The notes under the pieces: generated by a model | Seen by the model: the letters and a program-made list of their open reading frames with translations, nothing else | Database searches by the model: none | Told to the model about the DNA's origin: nothing | Shown: piece after piece, positions 8,850 through 58,120 of the stretch | Position numbering within the stretch: position 1 is the first letter of the stretch | Layout: every line of letters begins with the position of its first letter | Made by a program: the position numbers and the translations under genes | From: Octopus sinensis | Lineage: Eukaryota | DNA: 64,000 nucleotides | Assembly: GCF_006345805.1 (NCBI RefSeq) | Contig: NC_043012.1 | Location: forward strand, 51,894,001 to 51,958,000 | Direction of reading: 5' to 3'

Positions 8850-9665
8850 ACTATACTTTCCTTTTATTTCATTTTATCCATAATATCTGTGTTGGTTCTT
8901 TTATTTTTGCATTTGGTAAAATCACAACCCAGCATCATGATTTTATTCAGTTATCGTTTGAGCAGGCACTTGGTTAATGCATGCATTTTCTCAGATATGC
9001 AGTTTACAAAAACTAGAAATATGTTAACACATGTTTCTGTCGATTCCCTTTAAAGATCGAGTTTATTACTATGACCATTTCTGTTACAGTTTTACTTCAA
9101 ATGTCAGGAAACTTTTATTTTTCGAGTTAAATTATCTGCTTGAGAAGATTAACTACACTCTCAGATATTATGAGTACTGACTGCGTAAATAAATTTTGAT
9201 ATATAATCTTATTACGGAGAACCCTTAACAGTCATATCATTTATTGTCTCGTTTAGTCTTCGTTTGTTATTTCATCTACGTTCGCAACAACTTAGCGTGA
9301 TATATATTCATGAATACCTAAATATTTGTATCATCCATACCGTGGAAAAAAAGATATATTAGTAGACCATTGTAACAGACGTTTGTTCGATAAAGTTTTC
9401 TTTCTCCATCGATACTCAGGTATCGACAATTTTAAGGTCTCATTCTATAGCTATGTTCTCAGAAACTTGCACGTTTAAATACTTCAAGCATAAATACACA
9501 AGACCGGATCCTTCACAGAGTACTTATGCGTTCCATTAGCGTCCTTTGCTATTCTAAAACCCATGACGTAACCAGAGAAAGTAAAATTTCATGACAGGGA
9601 ATTTCGTGATAAAACAAGGAGAAAGCAATCCTCGAGTAATATTCCTTTTGGAATACTTATAACAT
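8850..9665 (-). mobile_element. Decayed LINE RT fragment, R4/Dong-like
   Basis: Minus-strand pieces ISIPKGILLEDCFLL (cf. GIFQGDSLSPLLF), SENIAIE (cf. FSxDIxMEFG), YKYLGIHE, QYSxNI and RKIKxFLT, in the expected order with many lesions. Confidence 0.6.
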
Positions 9666-11508: not shown

Positions 11509-12000
<492 letters not shown>

Positions 12001-19128: not shown

Positions 19129-19360
19129 GGCGGTGAACTGCCAGAAACATTAGCACGCTGGGCGAAATGCTTAGCGCTATTTCATCTGCCGTTACGTTCT
19201 AAGTTCAAATTCCGCCGAGGTTGACTTTGCCATTCATGTTTTAGGGATCGATAAACTAAGTACCAGTTATGCACTGGGGTCGATATAATCGACTTAATCC
19301 CTTTGTCTGTCCTTGTTTGTCCTCTCTGTGTGTAGCCCCTTGTTGGCAGTAAAGACATAT
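19129..19360 (+). mobile_element. SINE family B, full length
   Basis: ggcggtgaactgccagaaacattagcacg...gttctaagttcaaattccgccgagg...gcactggggtcgat...gtccttgtttgtcc...agtaaaga. Confidence 0.9.
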
Positions 19361-19531
19361 GATAGACAAAGATACACTCGTAAATGACCGATGTATCATG
19401 TATCGGCCATGAAATACAAAGTTAACTCCCCCCAATGTTCAAAGGATGAATGTAAAGAGCAGAACCAACTATCGTAAACCATTCTGCTAACGCATTACCT
19501 ACGCACACACACGCACTCACCGACACGCAAT

Positions 19532-19573
<42 letters not shown>

Positions 19574-19939
19574 TGCATGTGTGTCCATGTGTGACTGTGT
19601 GTGCATGAATATATGAGTGCGTGTATGTGTTTATGTACGGGCACCTTGTATATTTATAGATGCATATATGCACAAACACAGATGTATATATAGATTCTGT
19701 TGTAATTGTTATGTCGAAAAGCAGGATTAGTTTCTCACGCCTAAAGCATTTGTCCGATTGAAGACATTCAACACCAGGATTCATTGAATCTTAAATATTA
19801 TAATTTCGTCTCAGCCATTAGGTATGGTGACATAACCGGCTTCCTCAAACAAACAAATATACATTGATCCACAAAAGATTATAAGCATAAGTATATACTC
19901 ACATGCATATTTACACATACATATACACACACACACACA

Positions 19940-19985
<46 letters not shown>

Positions 19986-20003
19986 ACACACGCACACACA
20001 CAC

Positions 20004-20072
<69 letters not shown>

Positions 20073-20416
20073 ATACATAGATATAAATATATTTACATAC
20101 ATATACATGTACACATATATATGTATACTTACATGTGTTTGTGTGTGTGTGTGTGTCTAGAAATTTTATTTTACACTGATGTTTCGAAGAAGACCCGATA
20201 TTCACCTCCGCTAATCGAACATGTACTGTTTTTTCTTTGTGAATTTCAGCATCAAATATATATATACATATATATATTTATATATATATATATCATATGA
20301 ATGCATATCGTACATAAAGTTAAGATAATCATATATTCCATCTCATTTTCATATTTCCATAATCTTCTTAATGCTTCGGTCTGAAGCCAAGTTATAAGTC
20401 TTGCAATGACTATGCG

Positions 20417-20462
<46 letters not shown>

Positions 20463-20689
20463 TATATATATATTAATAATAAATATTAGGGAATAAATCC
20501 AAACTGACAGGGAAAAATCAGATTTAGGATTGAATCCAATTTTATAGTAAAATATTATATTATATTAAATTAGAGATAAAACCACTATTAGGGAAATCAT
20601 ACGATGAAAAACTTAAGCCAATACATAAGATTATCTAATTTATATTATTTAAATATATAACAAAATTATTAAGAAAATATAATTAATAT

Positions 20690-20760
20690 AACACTACGAT
20701 CGTTTCATGGCTGTTAATTTCTTTAAATTTTCGAGTTACAGTCATTCATCAGGTGGTTTA
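20690..20760 (-). ncRNA. Type I hammerhead ribozyme (left arm of palindrome)
   Basis: Mirror of the plus-strand motif. CUGAUGA at 20752-20746, GAAA at 20706-20703, GUA at 20697-20695. Confidence 0.8.
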
Positions 20761-20816
20761 AATATTTAACTTGGCGAGGTTTAATCAATTGATTAAACCT
20801 CGCCAAGTTAAATATT

Positions 20817-20888
20817 TAAACCACCTGATGAATGACTGTAACTCGAAAATTTAAAGAAATAACAGCCATGAAACGATCGTAGTGTTTA
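20817..20888 (+). ncRNA. Type I hammerhead ribozyme (right arm of palindrome)
   Basis: Stem I uaaa(c)cac/guguuua. CUGAUGA 20825-20831. Stem II augacugu/acagccau (7 of 8 pairs). GAAA 20870-20873. Stem III AC-GAUC-GU. Cleavage triplet GUA, predicted cut after 20881. Confidence 0.85.
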
Positions 20889-21009
20889 TTAATTATATTT
20901 TCTTAATAATTTTGTTATATATTTAAATAATATAAATTAAATAATCTTATGTATTGGCTTAAGTTTTTCATTGTATGATTTGCCTAATAGTGGTTTTATC
21001 TCTAATTTA

Positions 21010-21049
<40 letters not shown>

Positions 21050-21163
21050 TATATATATACATATATATATATACATACATAGATATATATATACATATAT
21101 ATATATGTATATATATATATATTTACATATATATACATATTATATATATATATATACATATAT

Positions 21164-21220
<57 letters not shown>

Positions 21221-21329
21221 TATATTTACATATATATACATATACATATATATACATATATATACATACATATATATATATATACATATATACATATATA
21301 TATACATACATATATTTATATATATTATA

Positions 21330-22612
21330 TCAGGTCATCCCAAAAGTTCTGTCCGATATTACCTTATTTTAAAATTGAATGAAATTTAATAGCATTTTAG
21401 AATGTCTAATGGAATTAAAAATAATTATTATGCATTTTTGTACATTTAAACTAATTAAATATTGTTTTACAGAATAATAGAATTAAAATTTCTTCGACTA
21501 AAACACTTTCTAACATAGAAGTATCCAAAGAGCATTGAGGCACATAATGTTTCATGACTACAAAAAAGGAAACTCTGCAGCCGAAGCGACTTGAAACATA
21601 CACTCAGTTTATGGGAAAGAATGTTTAAATGTAAGAACTTGCAGAAGATGGTTTACAAAATTCAGAAGTGGAGATTTCAGCCTTGAAGATGAAGATCGAA
21701 CAGAACCTCCAGTTGGGTTTGCTGATAAGCTCCTTGAAGCATTATTTGAAGAAAATTCTGCATTTTCAGTTGAAGAATTGGCAATATAGCTAGTTCAAAC
21801 CATACAACTGTTCATCGTTATCTTCGACAACTTGGAAAGCTTCCTAAACTTGGAAAACGGGTGCCTCATCAATTGTCCGAAAGCAACCGCAAATCCTGAG
21901 TTGACATCTGCTCTTCTCTCCATTCTCGCGTACTCATTTCACCCTTTTGGGTAGACTTGAGATTGGTGACGAAAAATGGATCTTCTATGGAAATGTTAAA
22001 TGTCGTAAACAGTGGCTTGGTAAAAGGGAAAAGTTCAACCAGAACCCAAAATGGAAATTCATGTGAAAAAGAGTCTTCTCTATATCTGGTGGGATTGCAA
22101 AGGAGTATTTCACTTTGAATTGTTATAACCTAATACAACAATCAATGCTCAAGTCTATTGTCAAAAATTAGAGCGTTTGAATCAAGCTTTGAAGAAAAAA
22201 GGACCCACTTTAGTGAATCGAAAAGGAGTGATGTTTCATCATGACAATGCGCGACCCCATACTGCAAAGATCACATCACAGAAGATCGAAGAGCTTGGTT
22301 GGGAGAAAAATTCCTCATTCACCTTATTTTCCCGACCTTGCTCCTTCAGACTACCATTTGTTTCGCAGTTTACAAAATTATTTGGGGGACATAACTTTTG
22401 CAAGCTTAGAGGTGGTCGAAACTGACATTTCAGAGTTCTTCACTTTGATACCAAAACAGTTTTACATTGATGGGATTAAAAAGCTTGTAAATAGATTGAA
22501 GGAAGTCATAGATACTCAGGAAAAAATACATTGATGATTATACTCCAAATATAACATTTGATCACTTGTTTTCTTTATTCAAAATTCTGAGAGAACTTGT
22601 GTGATGACCTGA
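21330..22612 (+). mobile_element. Full-length mariner transposon (1283 bp), non-functional
   Basis: 27-bp TIRs tcaggtcatcccaaaagttctgtccga and tctgagagaacttgtgtgatgacctga (4 mismatches). TA on the left flank. Confidence 0.95.
21515..22534 (+). pseudogene. Mariner DD34D transposase pseudogene
   Basis: RWFTKFRSGDFSLEDEDR, RVPHQL (WVPHEL), GDEKWI, HDNARPH and YFPDLAPSDYHLF. Start ATA, several stops and frameshifts. Confidence 0.95.
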
Positions 22613-22644
22613 TTTATATATATACACACGCACAAACACTCATA

Positions 22645-22722
<78 letters not shown>

Positions 22723-27918: not shown

Positions 27919-28047
27919 TGATAGATAGATAGATTCAGACGAATATGGTACATAAGTTCAGGCACGAAAATTTAGTACGGTGTTTTCCATAGAATTTCAA
28001 AATAAGATGATTAAAATCAAAATAAGCAACAACGATATCCAGAGCTA

Positions 28048-28128
28048 ATGCAGTACGATCGTTTCAAGCAAATCCATTTAATTGAACAATGTAACCATTA
28101 CATCAGTTTGAGCAATCCTCAGCTTCAT
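28048..28128 (-). ncRNA. Hammerhead relic
   Basis: augaag CUGAGGA ...(irregular stem II)... GAAAC GAUC GUA cugcau. Stem I pairs 5 of 6. Confidence 0.5.
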
Positions 28129-28399
28129 AAAGACATAGAATTTAACTAAATTAAAATAGATGGACACATTAGCATAATTTTACCTAAAATATCAAGAAGG
28201 TTAGGAGCTAGACAAAGTATCGCCAAAGCTGAAGAGAAAGTTGCATGTCCTTTGTCTATCTTCTTACATTTTTGAGATTTTAGGTAAAATTATACTAATG
28301 TGTACATCTGTTTTAATTTAATTTAATTAAATTATATGTCATTATGAGATTGACAAACTTACATAACAAGAAGGAGTACGGTTGGACGTATATTATTTC

Positions 28400-31250: not shown

Positions 31251-31397
31251 AACATACACCAATAAAGATGATGGGTCAATAGTATAAAAACCTAACAAAA
31301 ACCGCGAAACCGTAAACGTTTTGGTGGTTTGAGGAGTTGGATAACGATTATCGGAATGATGTATTTAATAAAACATTTGCGAGAATTGTTTGGTTTA

Positions 31398-31815
31398 GGC
31401 GTAGGAGTGACTGTGTGGTAAGTAGCTTGCTTACAAACCACATGATTCCGGGTTCAGTCCCACTGCGTAGCATATTGGGCAAGTGTCTTCTACTATAGCC
31501 TCGGGTCAACCGAAGCCTTGTGAGTGGATTTGGCAGACGGAAACTGAAAGAAGCCCGTCGTATATATGTAAATACATATAAATATATATATATGTATGTG
31601 TTTGTGTGTCTGTGTTTGTCCCCCCCCAACATCGCTTGACAACCGATGCTGGTGTGTTTACGTCTCCGTAACTTAGCGGTTCGGTAAAAGACACCGATAG
31701 AATATAAATTAAGCTTACAAAGAATAGGTCCCGGGGTCGATTTGCTCGACTAAAGGTGGTGCTCCAGCATGGCCACAGTCAAATGACTGAAACAAGTAAA
31801 AGAGTAAAAAGAGAG
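31398..31815 (+). mobile_element. SINE family A, full length
   Basis: ggcgtaggagtgactgtgtggtaagtagc...ccgggttcagtccc...aaacaagtaaaagag. Confidence 0.92.
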
Positions 31816-35668: not shown

Positions 35669-36650
35669 TTAAATCTAAGATATATTCTCTTTCATTTTTC
35701 TACAATGCTTTTTCCATCTGTCTCACAAACGTGGAAGGCCCCTCTAGCAAAATCAACTTGTGCGTAAGGTACTGTTCTGAACTCTTCTACAGAATTCATA
35801 TTTTTCGTCCAAATGATTTTGAAGACTGCGGAATTAATGATTATCAGATGAGACAATATCTGGAACATATGGTGTGTGGAGCATGGTTTCCCATTTTAAC
35901 TGCTCCAGCCTTTGGAATGTCATCCTTGCTGTATGTGGCCGAGAATTATCCTGGTGGAAGAACACCTTCCGTCTTCAAACTAAACATGTTCGTCTATCTT
36001 CTGGCACTGACTTGAGTCGATCCAGCTGCTCGCAGTAGATATTTGTTATCGTTTGTTTCAGGTTTAAAAGTTCAAAGTGGACAAAACATTTCATATCCTA
36101 CCAAACAGATTACAACACTTTTATCCTGAGGTCGTGGTAATTCTCCGTTCCCGTCTGTCTTCTGCACTTGATATTTTTATAGGGAACTCATTTCGTGTCA
36201 CCAGTAACTATTCGGTCCCAAAATCGTCCATTCATGAAACGTGATAGCAAAAAAAAAGCATACATTCAAACTCTCTGCCCACGATTAGACTCCGAACTTT
36301 TCTGAGGAACCCATTGACTCAGTTTGCTGACTTTTCCGATGGCATGCGGCTGTCGATGAATGGTGGAATGACCAAATCGAAGCTTCTCTTCCAGTTTTTC
36401 AACAGTTACGATGCGATTTTGTTCCACTAGGGTTTGAAGGACGTCCTCGTCGAGCTCTACAGATCTACCAGGACGAGGCTCGTCTTCTAGGCTATAGTTT
36501 CCAGCTCAGAATTTCTGGAACTACCATTTATACTGGCTTACACTTATTGTCCAATCGCCATATACTGTATTAATATTCCTCGCACTTTCCCTTGAGTTGC
36601 TGCCGTTATTGAAACTCATAAAATAATATATGCCAAATATGCCGTGATGC
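35665..36650 (-). pseudogene. Second mariner transposase pseudogene (different subfamily, TIRs not found)
   Basis: GNYSLEDEPRPGRS, WVPQK, RIVTGDTK*, HQDNSRPHTA, PYVPDIVSSDNH*FRSLQNHL. Confidence 0.92.
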
Positions 36651-47640: not shown

Positions 47641-48226
47641 GAGAGTGGAACTAACAGGTGAGTAGTAGCAGGGTGTAGCAGTAGCTGAATTTGGGTTCGA
47701 GAGGCTGGTTGATGAGTCGAGTGTGTACTGTGTGTGTACGTATGTATTTGTGCGTGTTCTTATGAGTGTGTGTATGAGTGTATGTAAATTTATGTGTATT
47801 TGTATGTGTGTATGTATGTGTATGTATATTTGCGTGTGTACGCTCGTGTGTGTGTGTGTCAATGTATATGAGGGATTTTTTACATGTTTATGATTATATG
47901 TAAATGTGTGTGTGTGTGTGTGAGTATGTGTGTGTGTCTAATGTAAATGTTGCATGTGTGTGGATGAGTGTGGAAGATATACAGAGAGGAGAAAGAAGAG
48001 AAAAGTAGAATGAGACAGGTGCGAGAAATAAAAGTACGGAAGTCGGAAGCTGTTGTATGAAGGAGCGGGGGAAATCTGGTGGTGATAGGTCCATGTTGTA
48101 AGACCAGGCCATGGTGTAAGGCACACACCGTGCACAAACATTCTGAATTCTTTACTGCCACAAGGGGTTACATACAGAGGAGACAGACAAGGACAGACAA
48201 ATGGATTAAGTCGATTATATCGATCC
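47641..48226 (-). repeat. Copy 1 of a composite SINE-B + ~520-bp extension
   Basis: Colinear with 57262-57886. Confidence 0.9.
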
Positions 48227-55252: not shown

Positions 55253-55510
55253 CATGTGTGTGTTATATATATAGACGGGGATAGTTTTATTCGTGTGGTG
55301 ACTATGATGCATTTCTTTGCTCGTAATTTTTGAGTAACCTGCGTAGCGTTCTTTTTCCATGTATATGCATTTAAGTAATTGGTAATTCTGAAGTATTTTA
55401 TACATATATTGCATTGATGAGTACTTACATGCATCTCTCACTCTATCCTTCTCTCTCCTCTCTCCCTTTAACTCTCTCCTCTCTCAATATATATATTCGT
55501 AGGTATAATC

Positions 55511-55556
<46 letters not shown>

Positions 55557-55564
<8 letters not shown>

Positions 55565-55801
55565 AAAGGGCTTAGTAAAATAAATTACTTTGCCGCATAC
55601 TGAACTCATTAGAAATAGCAGCCAAAAAAAACTTTTCTAAAACTATTTCTAATACTTAAAGAAAACCTCTCTCATATAGTGTATCAGAGAGGTTTTCTTT
55701 AAGTATTAGAAATAGTTTTAGAAAAGTTTTTTTTGGCTGCTATTTCTAATGAGTTCAGTATGCGGCAAAGTAATTTATTTTACTAAGCCCTTTTATATAA
55801 T
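55557..55801. repeat. Perfect 116-bp inverted repeat with a 13-nt spacer, in a (TA)n-embedded element (to about 55895)
   Basis: 55557-55672 is the exact reverse complement of 55686-55801. Spacer catatagtgtatc. Confidence 0.97.
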
Positions 55802-55957
55802 GTAATAATTTGAATTCGCCTTAAATGGTCCCTTTGCATACTGAATACTTGGTGAAATTGATTAATTAATTAATTTTACCCTCAATTGTTGAAATTATAT
55901 ATATATATATATATGCCTATATATTCGTACTTGCACACATATCTATCTATTTGTCCG

Positions 55958-56571: not shown

Positions 56572-57110
56572 GCGTGGCTGTGTGGTGAGAAATTAGCTTC
56601 TCAACCATATGGTTCTGGGTTTAGTACCGCTACGTGTCACCTTGGGCAAATGTCTTCTACGATATCCTCGGGTTCTCGAAAGCATTGAGACTGTATTTTA
56701 TATATGGAATCTGAAAAAAGCCTGTTGTGTGTATGTGTGTGCGCGCGTGCGCGCGTGTGTGTACTTCTATCTGTATTAGTCCCCCACCACTAATTGACAA
56801 CCTATTTCTTTACTACCCACAAGGGGCTAAACATAGAGGGGACAAACAAGGACAGACAAACAGATTAAGTCGATTACATCGACCTCAAATCGTAACTGGT
56901 ACTTGGTTTATCGACCCCGAAAGGATGAAAGGCAAAGTCGACAAACAGCGTTGGTGTGTTTACGGCCGTGTAAGCTACTGGTTCGGCAAAAATAACATAA
57001 CCGATTCAATAAAAACTACACTAAAAATGCTCGTGGGGGGGATTCGTTCTGAGAAAAATTCTTCAAAGTAGAATCCTGCTTGGTCACAGTCTAATGACTG
57101 ATACAAGTGA
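56572..57110 (+). mobile_element. SINE family A interrupted by an antisense SINE B (56801-56942)
   Basis: The family A body breaks at ttgacaac and resumes at aaacagcgttggtgtgtttacg. Confidence 0.8.
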
Positions 57111-57261: not shown

Positions 57262-58020
57262 GAGGGTGGAACTAACAGGTGAGTAGTAGCAGGGTGTAGC
57301 AGTAGCTTAATGTGGGGTCGAGAGGCTGGTTGATGAGTCGAGTGTGTATTGGGTGTGTACGTATGTATTTATGCGTGTTCTTATGAGTGTGTGTGTGTGT
57401 ACATGAGTGTATGTAAATATGTGTGTATTTGTATGTGTGTATGTATGTGTATGTATATTTGCGTGTGTACGCTGGTGTGTATGTGTGCGTCAATGTATAT
57501 GAGGGATTTTTTTACATGCTTATGATTATATGTAAATGTGTGTGTGTGTGAGTATGTGTGTGTGTCTATGTTTTATGTATAAGGTAATGTAAATTTTGCA
57601 TGTGTGTGGATGAGTGTGGAAGATATACAGAGAGGAGAAAGTAGAGAAAAGTAGAATGAGACAGGTGCGAGAAATAAAAGTATGGAAGTCGGAAGCTGTT
57701 GCATGAAGGAGCGGGGGAAATCTGGTGTTGATGCGTCCATGGTGTAAGACCAGGCCATGGTGTAAGCCTATGGTGTAAGACACACACCGTGCACAAACAT
57801 TCTTATTTCTTTACTGCCCACAAGGGGTTACACACAGAGGAGACAAACAAGGACAGACAAGTGGGTTAAGTCAATTATATCGACCCCAGTGCGTAACTGG
57901 TACTTATTTAATCGACTCCGAAAGAATGAAAGGCAAAGTGACCTCGGCGAAATTTGAACGTAGCGGCAGACGAAATACCACTAAGCATTTCTCCCGGCGT
58001 GCTAACGTTTCTGCCAGCTC
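57262..58020 (-). mobile_element. Copy 2 of the composite: full SINE B (57815-58020) plus ~550-bp 3' extension
   Basis: Colinear with 47641-48226. The SINE head is intact here. Confidence 0.9.
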
Positions 58021-58120
58021 CGGATACATAGCGGCAAAACTAGGTACGTTTAAGGCAATACATGTTGATACAGGAAATACAAGGACAGTCATGTGTGTGT
58101 TTGTGTGTGTGTGAGAGGGA

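What the first reader, a model, noticed from the sequence alone, without database searches (positions are those of the whole stretch)
20468..21019. 464-bp zero-spacer palindrome with an intact hammerhead ribozyme on each strand
Seen: arms of 233/231 bp (5 differences, the inner 72 bp perfect) meet with no loop at caa|ttg. Each arm holds a full type I hammerhead: stem I, CUGAUGA, stem II, GAAA, 2-bp stem III with a self-complementary GAUC loop, GUA site. The two point away from each other, so a transcript of either strand reads antisense ribozyme then sense ribozyme. The unit sits between (TA)n tracts and the left arm extends about 90 bp further. Established: palindromic stem III loops allow dimeric hammerhead folding. 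Inference: the RNA can either self-cleave or collapse into a ~230-bp duplex that silences the ribozyme and could feed RNAi or ADAR editing. The DNA could extrude a cruciform. It may be a snap-back integration product or a symmetric mobile unit.
Basis: partly seen in the sequence, partly recalled or inferred. Interest (0 to 1): 0.92.

Follow-up and report, generated by a model that had tools for sequence, protein, structure and literature searches.

The report
Head-to-head hammerhead retroelement relic
A real 464-bp AT-rich palindrome sits inside a (TA)n microsatellite, and each arm carries a weak, dimer-type hammerhead ribozyme motif; it most likely is the known head-to-head insertion scar of a Penelope-like or retrozyme-type retroelement, so it is ordinary rather than a new ribozyme switch.

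Summary
The palindrome is exactly as described. Its centre is 20788|20789, the arms are 233 and 231 bp, there are 5 differences, and the left arm runs on for about 82-88 bp. (TA)n lies on both sides.

Each arm holds a complete hammerhead core. Helix III is 2 bp with a GAUC loop, so ACGAUCGU is self-complementary. The cleavage sites are after 20881 (+) and 20695 (-).

"Intact" overstates it:
- Position 10.1-11.1 is A-U, not G-C.
- Helix II has an A·C mismatch.
- No Rfam hammerhead model matches.
- The monomer fold is unstable. Only a homodimer of two sense copies is predicted to give the active fold, and this locus cannot supply that in one transcript.

The anatomy matches published Penelope-like element (PLE) behaviour: an inverted 5'-truncated copy, an extension at one end, a (TA)n target, and paired hammerheads on opposite strands. 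Penelope inverted repeats are already known to yield siRNAs.

A second, unrelated palindrome at 55554-55804 has the same asymmetric, (TA)n-embedded layout. A degenerate hammerhead-like relic lies at 28054-28106.

PLE membership could not be proven, because I found no other copy of the element and no RT/endonuclease gene. Verdict: a probable new member of a known kind, of modest interest.

The parts
20419..20473 (.). Left (AT)n microsatellite flank. Proposed half of the (TA)n target tract.
   Evidence: TRF: 28 copies, 96% matches.
20474..20555 (-). Unique extension of the left (long) arm. It is the 3' part of the 321-nt unit read on the minus strand, and the right arm has no counterpart.
   Evidence: The arm alignment loses identity beyond 233/231 nt. 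The extension is not a duplicate of the arm: local alignment scores 28 against a shuffle 95th percentile of 31. No other copy in the window.
20556..20788 (-). Left arm of the palindrome (233 nt). The sense strand of its hammerhead motif is the minus strand, read from the centre outwards.
20688..20760 (-). Hammerhead-type motif of the left arm. Helix I 5' strand 20760-20753, CUGAUGA 20752-20746, helix II, GAAA 20706-20703, helix III ACGAUCGU, A17 at 20695, helix I 3' strand 20694-20688. Helix I is weakened by a 1-nt insertion at 20689.
   Evidence: CM R1 scores 111 bits by construction.
20789..21019 (+). Right (short) arm of the palindrome (231 nt). It ends in an internal AATATAATATA stretch that merges into the (TA)n tract.
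20817..20888 (+). Hammerhead-type motif of the right arm. Helix I 5' strand 20817-20824, CUGAUGA 20825-20831, helix II 20832-20869 (7 pairs plus an A·C mismatch, 23-nt loop), GAAA 20870-20873, helix III 20873-20880 (2 bp, GAUC loop), predicted cut after A17 at 20881, helix I 3' strand 20882-20888.
   Evidence: Rfam is negative.
21010..21330 (.). Right (AT)n / (ATAC)-type microsatellite flank, 162 copies. Proposed other half of the target tract.
   Evidence: TRF.

Best explanation
The locus is most likely a dead insertion of a hammerhead-bearing retroelement of the Penelope-like element (PLE) / animal-retrozyme kind. Only its 3'-terminal ~321 nt are present (20788 down to ~20468, minus strand), joined head-to-head to an inverted, slightly shorter second copy (20789-21019).

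Proposed sequence of events (inferred, not shown):
1. The element's endonuclease nicked a (TA)n microsatellite.
2. Reverse transcription started at the TA-rich 3' end of the RNA and stopped about 36 nt upstream of the ribozyme.
3. Either the nascent cDNA snapped back on itself, or a second cDNA was primed from the other target end.
4. The inverted copy was joined to the (TA)n at an internal TA-rich stretch (AATATAATATA) by microhomology. This left the long arm about 85 nt longer.

The arms have since accumulated 3 substitutions and 2 indels.

The ribozyme motif is the weak, dimer-dependent type typical of such elements: long helix II, short helix I, and a 2-bp helix III with a palindromic loop. 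In this head-to-head arrangement it is probably inert. One transcript contains only one sense copy, and that copy is zipped into a ~230-bp hairpin with its antisense partner.

Any present-day effect would be a by-product, such as hairpin RNA feeding small-RNA pathways or an AT-rich cruciform-prone DNA site. I do not think it is a selected function.
For: Shown in the sequence:
- Palindrome geometry and one-sided extension.
- (AT)n on both sides.
- Complete hammerhead core with a palindromic ACGAUCGU helix III in both arms. These are the only two descriptor hits in 64 kb, against 0 of equal quality in 40 Mb simulated.
- The homodimer MFE is the dimeric hammerhead, -20.4 kcal/mol, whereas the monomer hammerhead fold is only -2.0 to -2.8 kcal/mol.
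- The full palindrome RNA folds as a -331 kcal/mol hairpin.
- The arm differences include a CpG to TpG change, which looks like real divergence rather than read error.

Recurrence within the window:
- A second, sequence-unrelated palindrome at 55554-55804 has the same layout. (TA)n abuts the short arm, there is a 5-nt spacer, the long arm runs on for ~91 bp and then meets (TA)n, and the short arm ends in TATATAAT.
- A degenerate CUGAUG...GAAACGAUCGUA relic lies at 28054-28106. It points away from the centre of an older palindrome at 28125-28347.

Literature:
- PLE hammerheads have a long helix II (7-8 bp), a short helix I and a small palindromic helix III. They act as dimers with low activity, occur massively as solo truncated copies, and also occur as pairs 100-700 bp apart on opposite strands (PMC4209133).
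- PLE insertions are 5'-truncated, often carry an adjacent inverted 5'-truncated copy and an extension at one end only, and prefer (TA)n. Hammerheads lie near the 3' end (PMC8557442).
- Animal retrozymes derive from PLE terminal repeats (bioRxiv 10.64898/2026.07.22.740005).
Against: - No second copy of the arm exists in the window. I found none in metagenome or viral collections either. Repetitiveness, variable 5' truncation and homology to a full-length PLE are therefore unproven.
- I saw no RT or GIY-YIG coding remnant. This test was only partial, and such a remnant is not expected for a truncated copy.
- Rfam does not recognise it.
- By my estimate a few motifs of this quality could arise by chance in a Gb-sized AT-rich genome.
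- The one-sided extension is ~82-88 bp, not the 30-40 bp reported for PLE tails.
- A CM built from the two arms finds no other significant copy. The relic at 28046-28116 scores only E = 1.1.
Confidence: 0.55

Rival explanations
1. DNA-level fold-back duplication. A solo hammerhead-bearing element (the 321-nt left unit) was already present next to a fragile (TA)n tract. A break, followed by fold-back priming or template switching during repair or replication, copied 231 bp of it in inverted orientation. The new copy was rejoined to the (TA)n by TA microhomology. On this reading the palindrome has nothing to do with the element's own integration machinery.
For: - Both palindromes in the window end their short arm in a TA-rich stretch that merges with (TA)n.
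- The second palindrome has a 5-nt spacer, as expected for a fold-back loop.
- The two units are unrelated in sequence. This fits a host repair process acting at (TA)n as well as it fits two separate TE insertions.
Against: - In both loci the whole unit, not just the duplicated part, is embedded in (TA)n on both sides. That looks like insertion of foreign DNA into a tract.
- Published PLE insertions produce this structure directly (PMC8557442).
Confidence: 0.17
2. A foldback / MITE-type DNA transposon. The two arms are long terminal inverted repeats, it inserted at a TA within the microsatellite, and the hammerhead-like motif is a chance match in AT-rich sequence.
For: - The near-perfect inverted arms make up the whole element.
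- TA-rich targets are typical of Tc1/mariner-derived MITEs, and a mariner element sits 310 bp away in the same tract.
- Rfam does not support the ribozyme, and single-arm folding is no better than shuffles.
- By my estimate chance motifs of this quality occur a few times per Gb.
Against: - The expected chance frequency of the motif is about 2e-4 per window, and none occurred in 40 Mb of simulation.
- The arm termini show no similarity to the neighbouring mariner TIR (TCAGGTCATCC...).
- The one-sided 82-88 bp extension is not explained.
- No second copy exists in 64 kb.
- The exact 12-mer GAAACGAUCGUA with CUGAUG 41 nt upstream recurs at 28054-28106.
Confidence: 0.13
3. Assembly or library fold-back artefact. 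Candidate causes are a chimeric long read, a missed adapter, or template switching during amplification.
For: Palindromes and PLE inverted structures are known trouble spots for assemblers (PMC8557442). No reads were available to me.
Against: - The mirror symmetry stops after 231 bp, with different unique sequence on each side.
- The arms differ by 3 substitutions, including a CpG to TpG change, and 2 indels.
- A second palindrome with 98% arm identity and the same asymmetric layout lies 35 kb away.
Confidence: 0.05
4. The locus is a selected RNA device in which ribozyme self-cleavage competes with formation of a ~230-bp duplex, and the duplex feeds RNAi or ADAR editing. Alternatively it is a symmetric mobile unit.
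For: - The two alternative folds exist in silico.
- Inverted Penelope repeats do give siRNAs in flies (PMC3681739).
Against: - One transcript carries only one sense ribozyme, and the monomer fold is unstable.
- The antisense arm is transcribed first and pairs from a zero-length loop, so the duplex should always win (-331 kcal/mol).
- The 5 arm differences are too few to show any selection.
- There is no evidence of transcription.
Confidence: 0.05

Closest known systems
Minimal / small-helix-III type I hammerheads of Penelope-like elements (Cervera & de la Pena 2014, PMC4209133; Lunse, Weinberg & Breaker 2017, cited in PMC6765202)
   Same: Type I topology. Long helix II (8 positions here, 7-8 bp reported). 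Short, poorly defined helix I. Tiny helix III with a palindromic 15.2-16.2 segment and loop. Predicted to work only as a dimer. Reported as solo truncated copies and as pairs 100-700 bp apart on opposite strands.
   Different: A10.1-U11.1 instead of the highly conserved G10.1-C11.1. [quoted passage not shown] An A·C mismatch in helix II and a large 23-nt loop 2. No link to a PLE ORF could be shown here.
PLE insertion architecture: pseudo-LTRs, adjacent inverted 5'-truncated copy, one-sided tail, (TA)n target (Craig et al. 2021, PMC8557442; Neptune, Hydra and Naiad clades)
   Same: Head-to-head inverted copy at the 5' side. Extension at one end only. Embedded in (TA)n. Hammerhead in the 3' region pointing outwards.
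   Different: Only ~321 nt of the element is present, with no ORF. The extension is 82-88 bp rather than 30-40 bp. The two copies are truncated at the same nucleotide, giving a zero-spacer palindrome.
Animal non-LTR retrozymes and hammerhead SINE-like or satellite repeats (Cervera & de la Pena 2020, PMC7229834; Schistosoma Sm-alpha, newt satellite 2)
   Same: Non-coding unit of a few hundred nt (321 nt here; 170-400 nt reported). It carries a type I hammerhead with a 2-bp helix III and a tetraloop, described as typical of invertebrate hammerheads.
   Different: Those elements are direct tandem repeats, so one transcript supplies two sense ribozymes for dimer cleavage and circularisation. Here the copies are inverted. 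The canonical 6-bp helix I, 4-bp helix II and loop-loop contacts are absent.
Rearranged Penelope copies with long inverted repeats that yield siRNAs (Evgen'ev 2013, PMC3681739)
   Same: An inverted repeat of PLE-type sequence that would form dsRNA if transcribed.
   Different: No expression or small-RNA data exist for this locus. The source organism is unknown.
Palindromic AT-rich repeats (PATRRs) of human chromosomes 11, 17 and 22 (from my own knowledge, not checked here)
   Same: Several-hundred-bp, near-perfect, spacer-less, AT-rich palindrome (22% GC) that could extrude a cruciform.
   Different: PATRRs are defined by their role in recurrent translocations and carry no ribozyme motif. Nothing of that kind can be tested here.

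Membership tests
Hammerhead ribozyme (type I) | Conserved core: C3 U4 G5 A6 N7 G8 A9, G12 A13 A14, A15.1-U16.1, H17 | tested here: met
   CUGAUGA ... GAAA ... U-A17 is present in both arms.
Hammerhead ribozyme (type I) | Three helices around the core, with helix I open | tested here: met
   Helix I is 3+4 bp with one bulge (right arm) or 3+2 bp (left arm). Helix II has 7 pairs plus an A·C mismatch. Helix III is 2 bp. All are weak: the monomer hammerhead fold is -2.0 to -2.8 kcal/mol against an MFE of -7.0.
Hammerhead ribozyme (type I) | G10.1-C11.1 closing pair of helix II | tested here: not met
   It is A10.1-U11.1 in both arms.
Hammerhead ribozyme (type I) | Match to a curated covariance model (Rfam Hammerhead_1, _3, _II, HH9, HH10) | tested here: not met
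   No hammerhead family at gathering score or at E<=10 on 701 nt or 131 nt.
Hammerhead ribozyme (type I) | Conservation of the core and covariation of the helices among independent copies | tested here: inconclusive
   The two arms are one event (97% identical). The only other candidate, 28054-28106, shares CUGAUG and GAAACGAUCGUA but has U at position 9, no convincing helices, and CM E = 1.1.
Hammerhead ribozyme (type I) | Site-specific self-cleavage | not testable with these tools
   Needs in vitro transcription of the monomer and of a direct dimer.
PLE-type minimal / dimeric hammerhead | Long helix II, short helix I, palindromic 15.2-16.2 plus loop 3, dimer-competent | tested here: met
   8-position helix II. 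ACGAUCGU is self-complementary. The RNAcofold homodimer MFE is the dimeric hammerhead, -20.4 kcal/mol. Criteria taken from PMC4209133.
PLE-type minimal / dimeric hammerhead | [quoted passage not shown] | tested here: not met
   A9 is followed directly by the paired A10.1.
Penelope-like element (insertion) | RT plus GIY-YIG endonuclease ORF in, or continuous with, the copy | tested here: inconclusive
   No Pfam hit in 17 ORFs other than mariner, and no RT motif-C or GIY-YIG pattern in ORFs of at least 35 aa. The test was partial, and a 5'-truncated copy need not retain the ORF.
Penelope-like element (insertion) | Sequence homology of the unit to the terminal repeat or 3' end of a full-length PLE of the same genome | not testable with these tools
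   The source genome is not available. No copy in the window or in the metagenome and viral collections.
Penelope-like element (insertion) | 5' truncation with an adjacent inverted 5'-truncated copy | tested here: met
   Head-to-head arms, with the hammerhead sense pointing outwards. Criterion from PMC8557442.
Penelope-like element (insertion) | Microsatellite, especially (TA)n, target and an extension at one end only | tested here: met
   (AT)n at 20419-20473 and 21010-21330. One-sided extension at 20474-20555. Its length of 82-88 bp exceeds the reported 30-40 bp.
Animal non-LTR retrozyme | Direct tandem repeats of a 170-400 bp unit, each with a type I hammerhead | tested here: not met
   The two copies are inverted, not tandem. 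The unit length of 321 nt is within the reported range.
MITE / foldback DNA transposon | Fixed terminal inverted repeat ends, target-site duplication, many like copies | tested here: inconclusive
   The outer ends dissolve into (TA)n, so ends and duplication cannot be read. No other copy in 64 kb. No similarity to the nearby mariner TIR.
microRNA / hairpin-RNA gene | Match to a curated precursor family above threshold | tested here: not met
   Only sub-threshold generic hairpin matches, for example MIR5380 at 97 bits against a gathering score of 150.

The most novel reading that the evidence does not exclude
The window holds at least two, and perhaps three, unrelated units with the same asymmetric layout: (TA)n | short inverted arm | zero- or 5-nt centre | long arm about 85-90 nt longer | (TA)n. 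In each, the short arm ends in an internal TA-rich stretch. This could expose an undescribed rule of integration for hammerhead-bearing and hammerhead-less non-autonomous PLE-type elements: snap-back at the RNA 5' end, followed by capture of the second target end by TA microhomology. Alternatively the palindromic unit could itself be mobile, with its hairpin transcript used by small-RNA or editing pathways.
Probability: 0.08. Interest if true: 0.55.

Novelty: new member of a known kind. Interest (0 to 1): 0.3.

Why it matters
If the reading is right, this is one more copy of a very abundant class: hammerhead-bearing Penelope-like or retrozyme relics. Its value is as a clean example. It shows a zero-spacer head-to-head junction, a microhomology join to (TA)n, and a second locus with the same layout nearby. 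Together these could help test models of how these elements integrate, which the field itself lists as unresolved (PMC8557442). It does not open a new question about ribozymes. The dimer-only ribozyme is disabled by the inverted arrangement. RNAi from inverted Penelope repeats is already documented.

Tried and rejected
1. Rfam, on the whole window at gathering score and on 701-nt and 131-nt pieces at E<=10. There was no hammerhead family. The only hits were generic hairpin or miRNA matches caused by the palindrome.
2. Thermodynamic support for a single-arm ribozyme: none, z about -0.04 to -0.4.
3. Family copies in the window by blastn: none. A covariance model built from the two arms found none that was significant.
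4. Family copies in public collections. The strict pattern found 0 in metagenomes. The relaxed pattern found 7 hits, all unrelated chance matches of 27-63% GC with no flanking similarity. Viral contigs gave 0. I did not scan the prokaryotic genome collection because it is irrelevant to an animal-type sequence.
5. Identifying the organism through proteins. A SINE-like ORF had no homologue. The mariner transposase fragment found only 40-58% identical SETMAR/Mos1-type proteins, so the source species is not in the protein collection. From memory the SINE-like repeats resemble an octopus SINE. This is an untested lead.
6. Whether the one-sided extension is a partial duplicate of the arm: it is not.
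7. Whether the second palindrome is related to the first or hides a hammerhead: neither.
8. Supplementary consensus files of the two key PLE papers are not held. The Lunse et al. paper is not held.
I replaced it with ORF-wise Pfam scans and a motif regex.

Full report
OBSERVATION

The palindrome is centred between 20788 and 20789 (caa|ttg), and 72 pairs match before the first difference. The arms are 20556-20788 (233 nt) and 20789-21019 (231 nt). They differ by two 1-nt indels (left-arm positions 20717 and 20689) and three substitutions: 20635/20940, 20603/20972 (a CpG to TpG change) and 20593/20982. GC content is 22%.

As RNA the 464 nt fold into one hairpin of -331 kcal/mol, with z = -51 against shuffles. 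The left arm continues as unique sequence to about 20474. This extension is not a duplicate of any part of the arm. (AT)n tracts lie at 20419-20473 and 21010-21330. The window is 34% GC, dense in TA/CA microsatellites, has no tRNA genes and no N runs, and looks like an animal genome.

THE RIBOZYME MOTIF

On the plus strand of the right arm the elements are:
- helix I 5' strand 20817-20824
- CUGAUGA 20825-20831
- helix II 20832-20869
- GAAA 20870-20873
- helix III 20873-20880 (A-U and C-G pairs closing a GAUC loop)
- A17 at 20881
- helix I 3' strand 20882-20888

The mirror image lies on the minus strand of the left arm, with CUGAUGA at 20752-20746 and A17 at 20695.

A descriptor I wrote requires CUGANGA, helix II of at least 4 bp, GAAA, a palindromic 15.2-16.2 insert, UH and helix I. 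It finds only these two sites in the 64 kb. In 40 Mb of first-order Markov sequence with the window's composition, the relaxed descriptor hits 0.34 times per 64 kb. A motif of the observed quality was never seen. Multiplying the separate frequencies gives about 2e-4 per window. The motif is therefore unexpected here, but a few such motifs could arise by chance in a Gb-sized genome.

'Intact' is too strong, for these reasons:
- The pair closing helix II is A10.1-U11.1, not the conserved G-C.
- Helix II contains an A·C mismatch and a 23-nt loop.
- Helix I is 3+4 bp with a bulged C in the right arm and only 3+2 bp in the left arm, because of the indel at 20689.
- No Rfam hammerhead family matches at gathering score or at E<=10, even when a single 131-nt arm is searched alone.
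- Single arms fold no better than shuffles.
- The hammerhead fold of a monomer is worth only -2.0 to -2.8 kcal/mol against an MFE of -7.0.

In contrast, two sense copies are predicted to fold as the classical dimeric hammerhead. It has an 8-bp intermolecular helix III (ACGAUCGU) and scores -20.4 kcal/mol against -14.0 for two monomers.

WHAT IT IS

The anatomy fits published descriptions of Penelope-like elements (PLEs) point by point.

Cervera and de la Pena (PMC4209133) found that metazoan PLE hammerheads have:
- a longer helix II (7-8 bp)
- a short helix I with a poorly defined loop
- a small palindromic helix III
- dimer-only and low activity
- mostly solo, truncated copies

They also noted pairs '~100-700 bp' apart 'in opposite strands'.

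Craig et al. (PMC8557442) describe PLE insertions as strongly 5'-truncated. [quoted passage not shown] They prefer (TA)n targets (Naiad; almost all Hydra families; (TA)n also marked as preferred target in their domain figure). Hammerheads lie near the 3' end.

Here the two ribozymes point away from the centre, so the centre is the common 5' end. The outer ends are 3' ends lying in (TA)n, and one end carries an extra 82-88 nt. [quoted passage not shown] A 321-nt non-coding unit is compatible with either label.

RECURRENCE IN THE WINDOW

A scan for short-spacer palindromes outside simple repeats found exactly one other. Its arms are 55554-55676 and 55682-55804 (123 nt, 98% complementary, 5-nt spacer). 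Its left (short) arm abuts (TA)n at 55514-55564. Its right arm continues for about 91 unique bp to (TA)n at 55896-55914. This is the same architecture, mirror-imaged. The sequence is unrelated to the first palindrome and has no hammerhead.

In both loci the short arm stops inside an internal TA-rich stretch of the unit (AATATAATATA and TATATAAT) that runs straight into the microsatellite. This suggests a microhomology join.

A third site, 28054-28106 on the minus strand, has CUGAUG followed 41 nt later by the exact 12-mer GAAACGAUCGUA. There are 3 matches in the window against 0.29 expected with up to 1 mismatch. However, it has U at position 9, no convincing helices, and scores only E = 1.1 with a covariance model built from the two arms. 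It lies just outside the left arm of an older, 75%-identical palindrome at 28125-28347, and it points away from that centre. I regard it as a possible decayed relative, not as proof.

HOW IT MOST LIKELY WORKS

These steps are inferred:
1. A PLE-type endonuclease nicks a (TA)n tract.
2. The TA-rich 3' end of the element RNA pairs with the target.
3. cDNA synthesis ends about 36 nt upstream of the ribozyme.
4. The cDNA snaps back, or a second cDNA is primed from the other target end.
5. The inverted copy is captured by TA microhomology.
6. The arms then diverge by about 1.3% plus two indels.

These points are shown directly by the sequence or by computation. The ribozyme needs two sense copies to fold. 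The locus offers one sense copy per transcript. A read-through transcript pairs from a zero-length loop into a perfect duplex. The ribozyme is therefore most likely silent here, and the locus is a relic.

Side effects are conceivable. Evgen'ev (PMC3681739) reports that rearranged Penelope copies with long inverted repeats give siRNAs that map 'precisely' to the inverted regions. AT-rich spacer-less palindromes can extrude cruciforms (my own knowledge of human PATRRs, not tested here). Neither effect can be examined without expression data.

RIVALS

- A host repair or replication fold-back at a fragile (TA)n tract, duplicating a pre-existing solo unit, would give the same picture (confidence 0.17).
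- A foldback or MITE-type DNA transposon with a chance hammerhead-like motif (0.13). A mariner element lies 310 bp away, but its terminal repeats are unrelated.
- An assembly artefact (0.05). Against it are the local extent of the symmetry, the mutational differences between the arms, and the second locus.

LIMITS

- I could not obtain any other copy of the unit. There was none in the window. Two metagenome scans gave 0 hits and then 7 hits, all chance. One viral scan gave 0.
- The source species is not represented in the protein collection.
- I saw no RT or GIY-YIG remnant, but that test was partial.
- Membership in the PLE family is therefore not established. The claim is that the locus has the insertion signature and the ribozyme type of that family.

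VERDICT

The locus is a probable new member of a known kind. Interest is modest (0.3).

Noticed in passing
window 55554-55804 (arms 55554-55676 / 55682-55804), extension 55805-55895, (TA)n 55514-55564 and 55896-55914: A second near-perfect palindrome (123-nt arms, 98%, 5-nt spacer) with the same asymmetric, (TA)n-embedded layout as the finding, mirror-imaged. Its sequence is unrelated and it has no hammerhead. There is a possible 11-12 bp direct repeat ATATATTCGTA at about 55489-55500 and 55920-55931 (a target duplication?).
   Followed up: partly
window 28054-28106 (minus strand) and 28125-28347: CUGAUGU...GAAACGAUCGUA: an exact copy of the 12-nt core and helix III of the finding's hammerhead, with CUGAUG 41 nt upstream. 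It has U at position 9 and no clear helices. It lies beside an older 75%-identical palindrome and points away from that centre. Possibly a decayed relative.
   Followed up: partly
window 21330-22612 (+): A degraded mariner/Mos1-type DNA transposon of 1283 bp. It has terminal inverted repeats of about 27 bp (TCAGGTCATCC... / ...GGATGACCTGA). Its left end abuts the right end of the same (TA)n tract and its right end lies close to further (AC)n/(AT)n repeats. Transposase fragments match HTH_48 and Transposase_1. Another mariner fragment lies at 36269-36505 (-).
   Followed up: yes
window 9059-9154 (minus strand): The best non-self hit of the covariance model built from the two arms (17.2 bits, E = 0.12). 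It shares AACUCGAAAA and GAAAUGGUCAUAG but lacks CUGAUGA. Not significant.
   Followed up: no
window 19259-19438 (-), 56715-57068 (+), 57779-58111 (+), 48089-48226 (+); also 11600-11971 (-), 31351-31749 (-): Repeated SINE-like sequences whose translations recur, for example ...PQG.THRGDKQGQT.GLS.LYRPQ..TGT.... From memory they resemble a cephalopod (octopus) SINE. This is untested, and no protein-level homologue was found.
   Followed up: partly
window 19500-22720: A compound microsatellite region ((CA)n, (AT)n, (ATAC)n). It has taken at least two independent mobile-element insertions, the palindrome and the mariner. (TA)n tracts appear to act as landing pads in this genome.
   Followed up: partly
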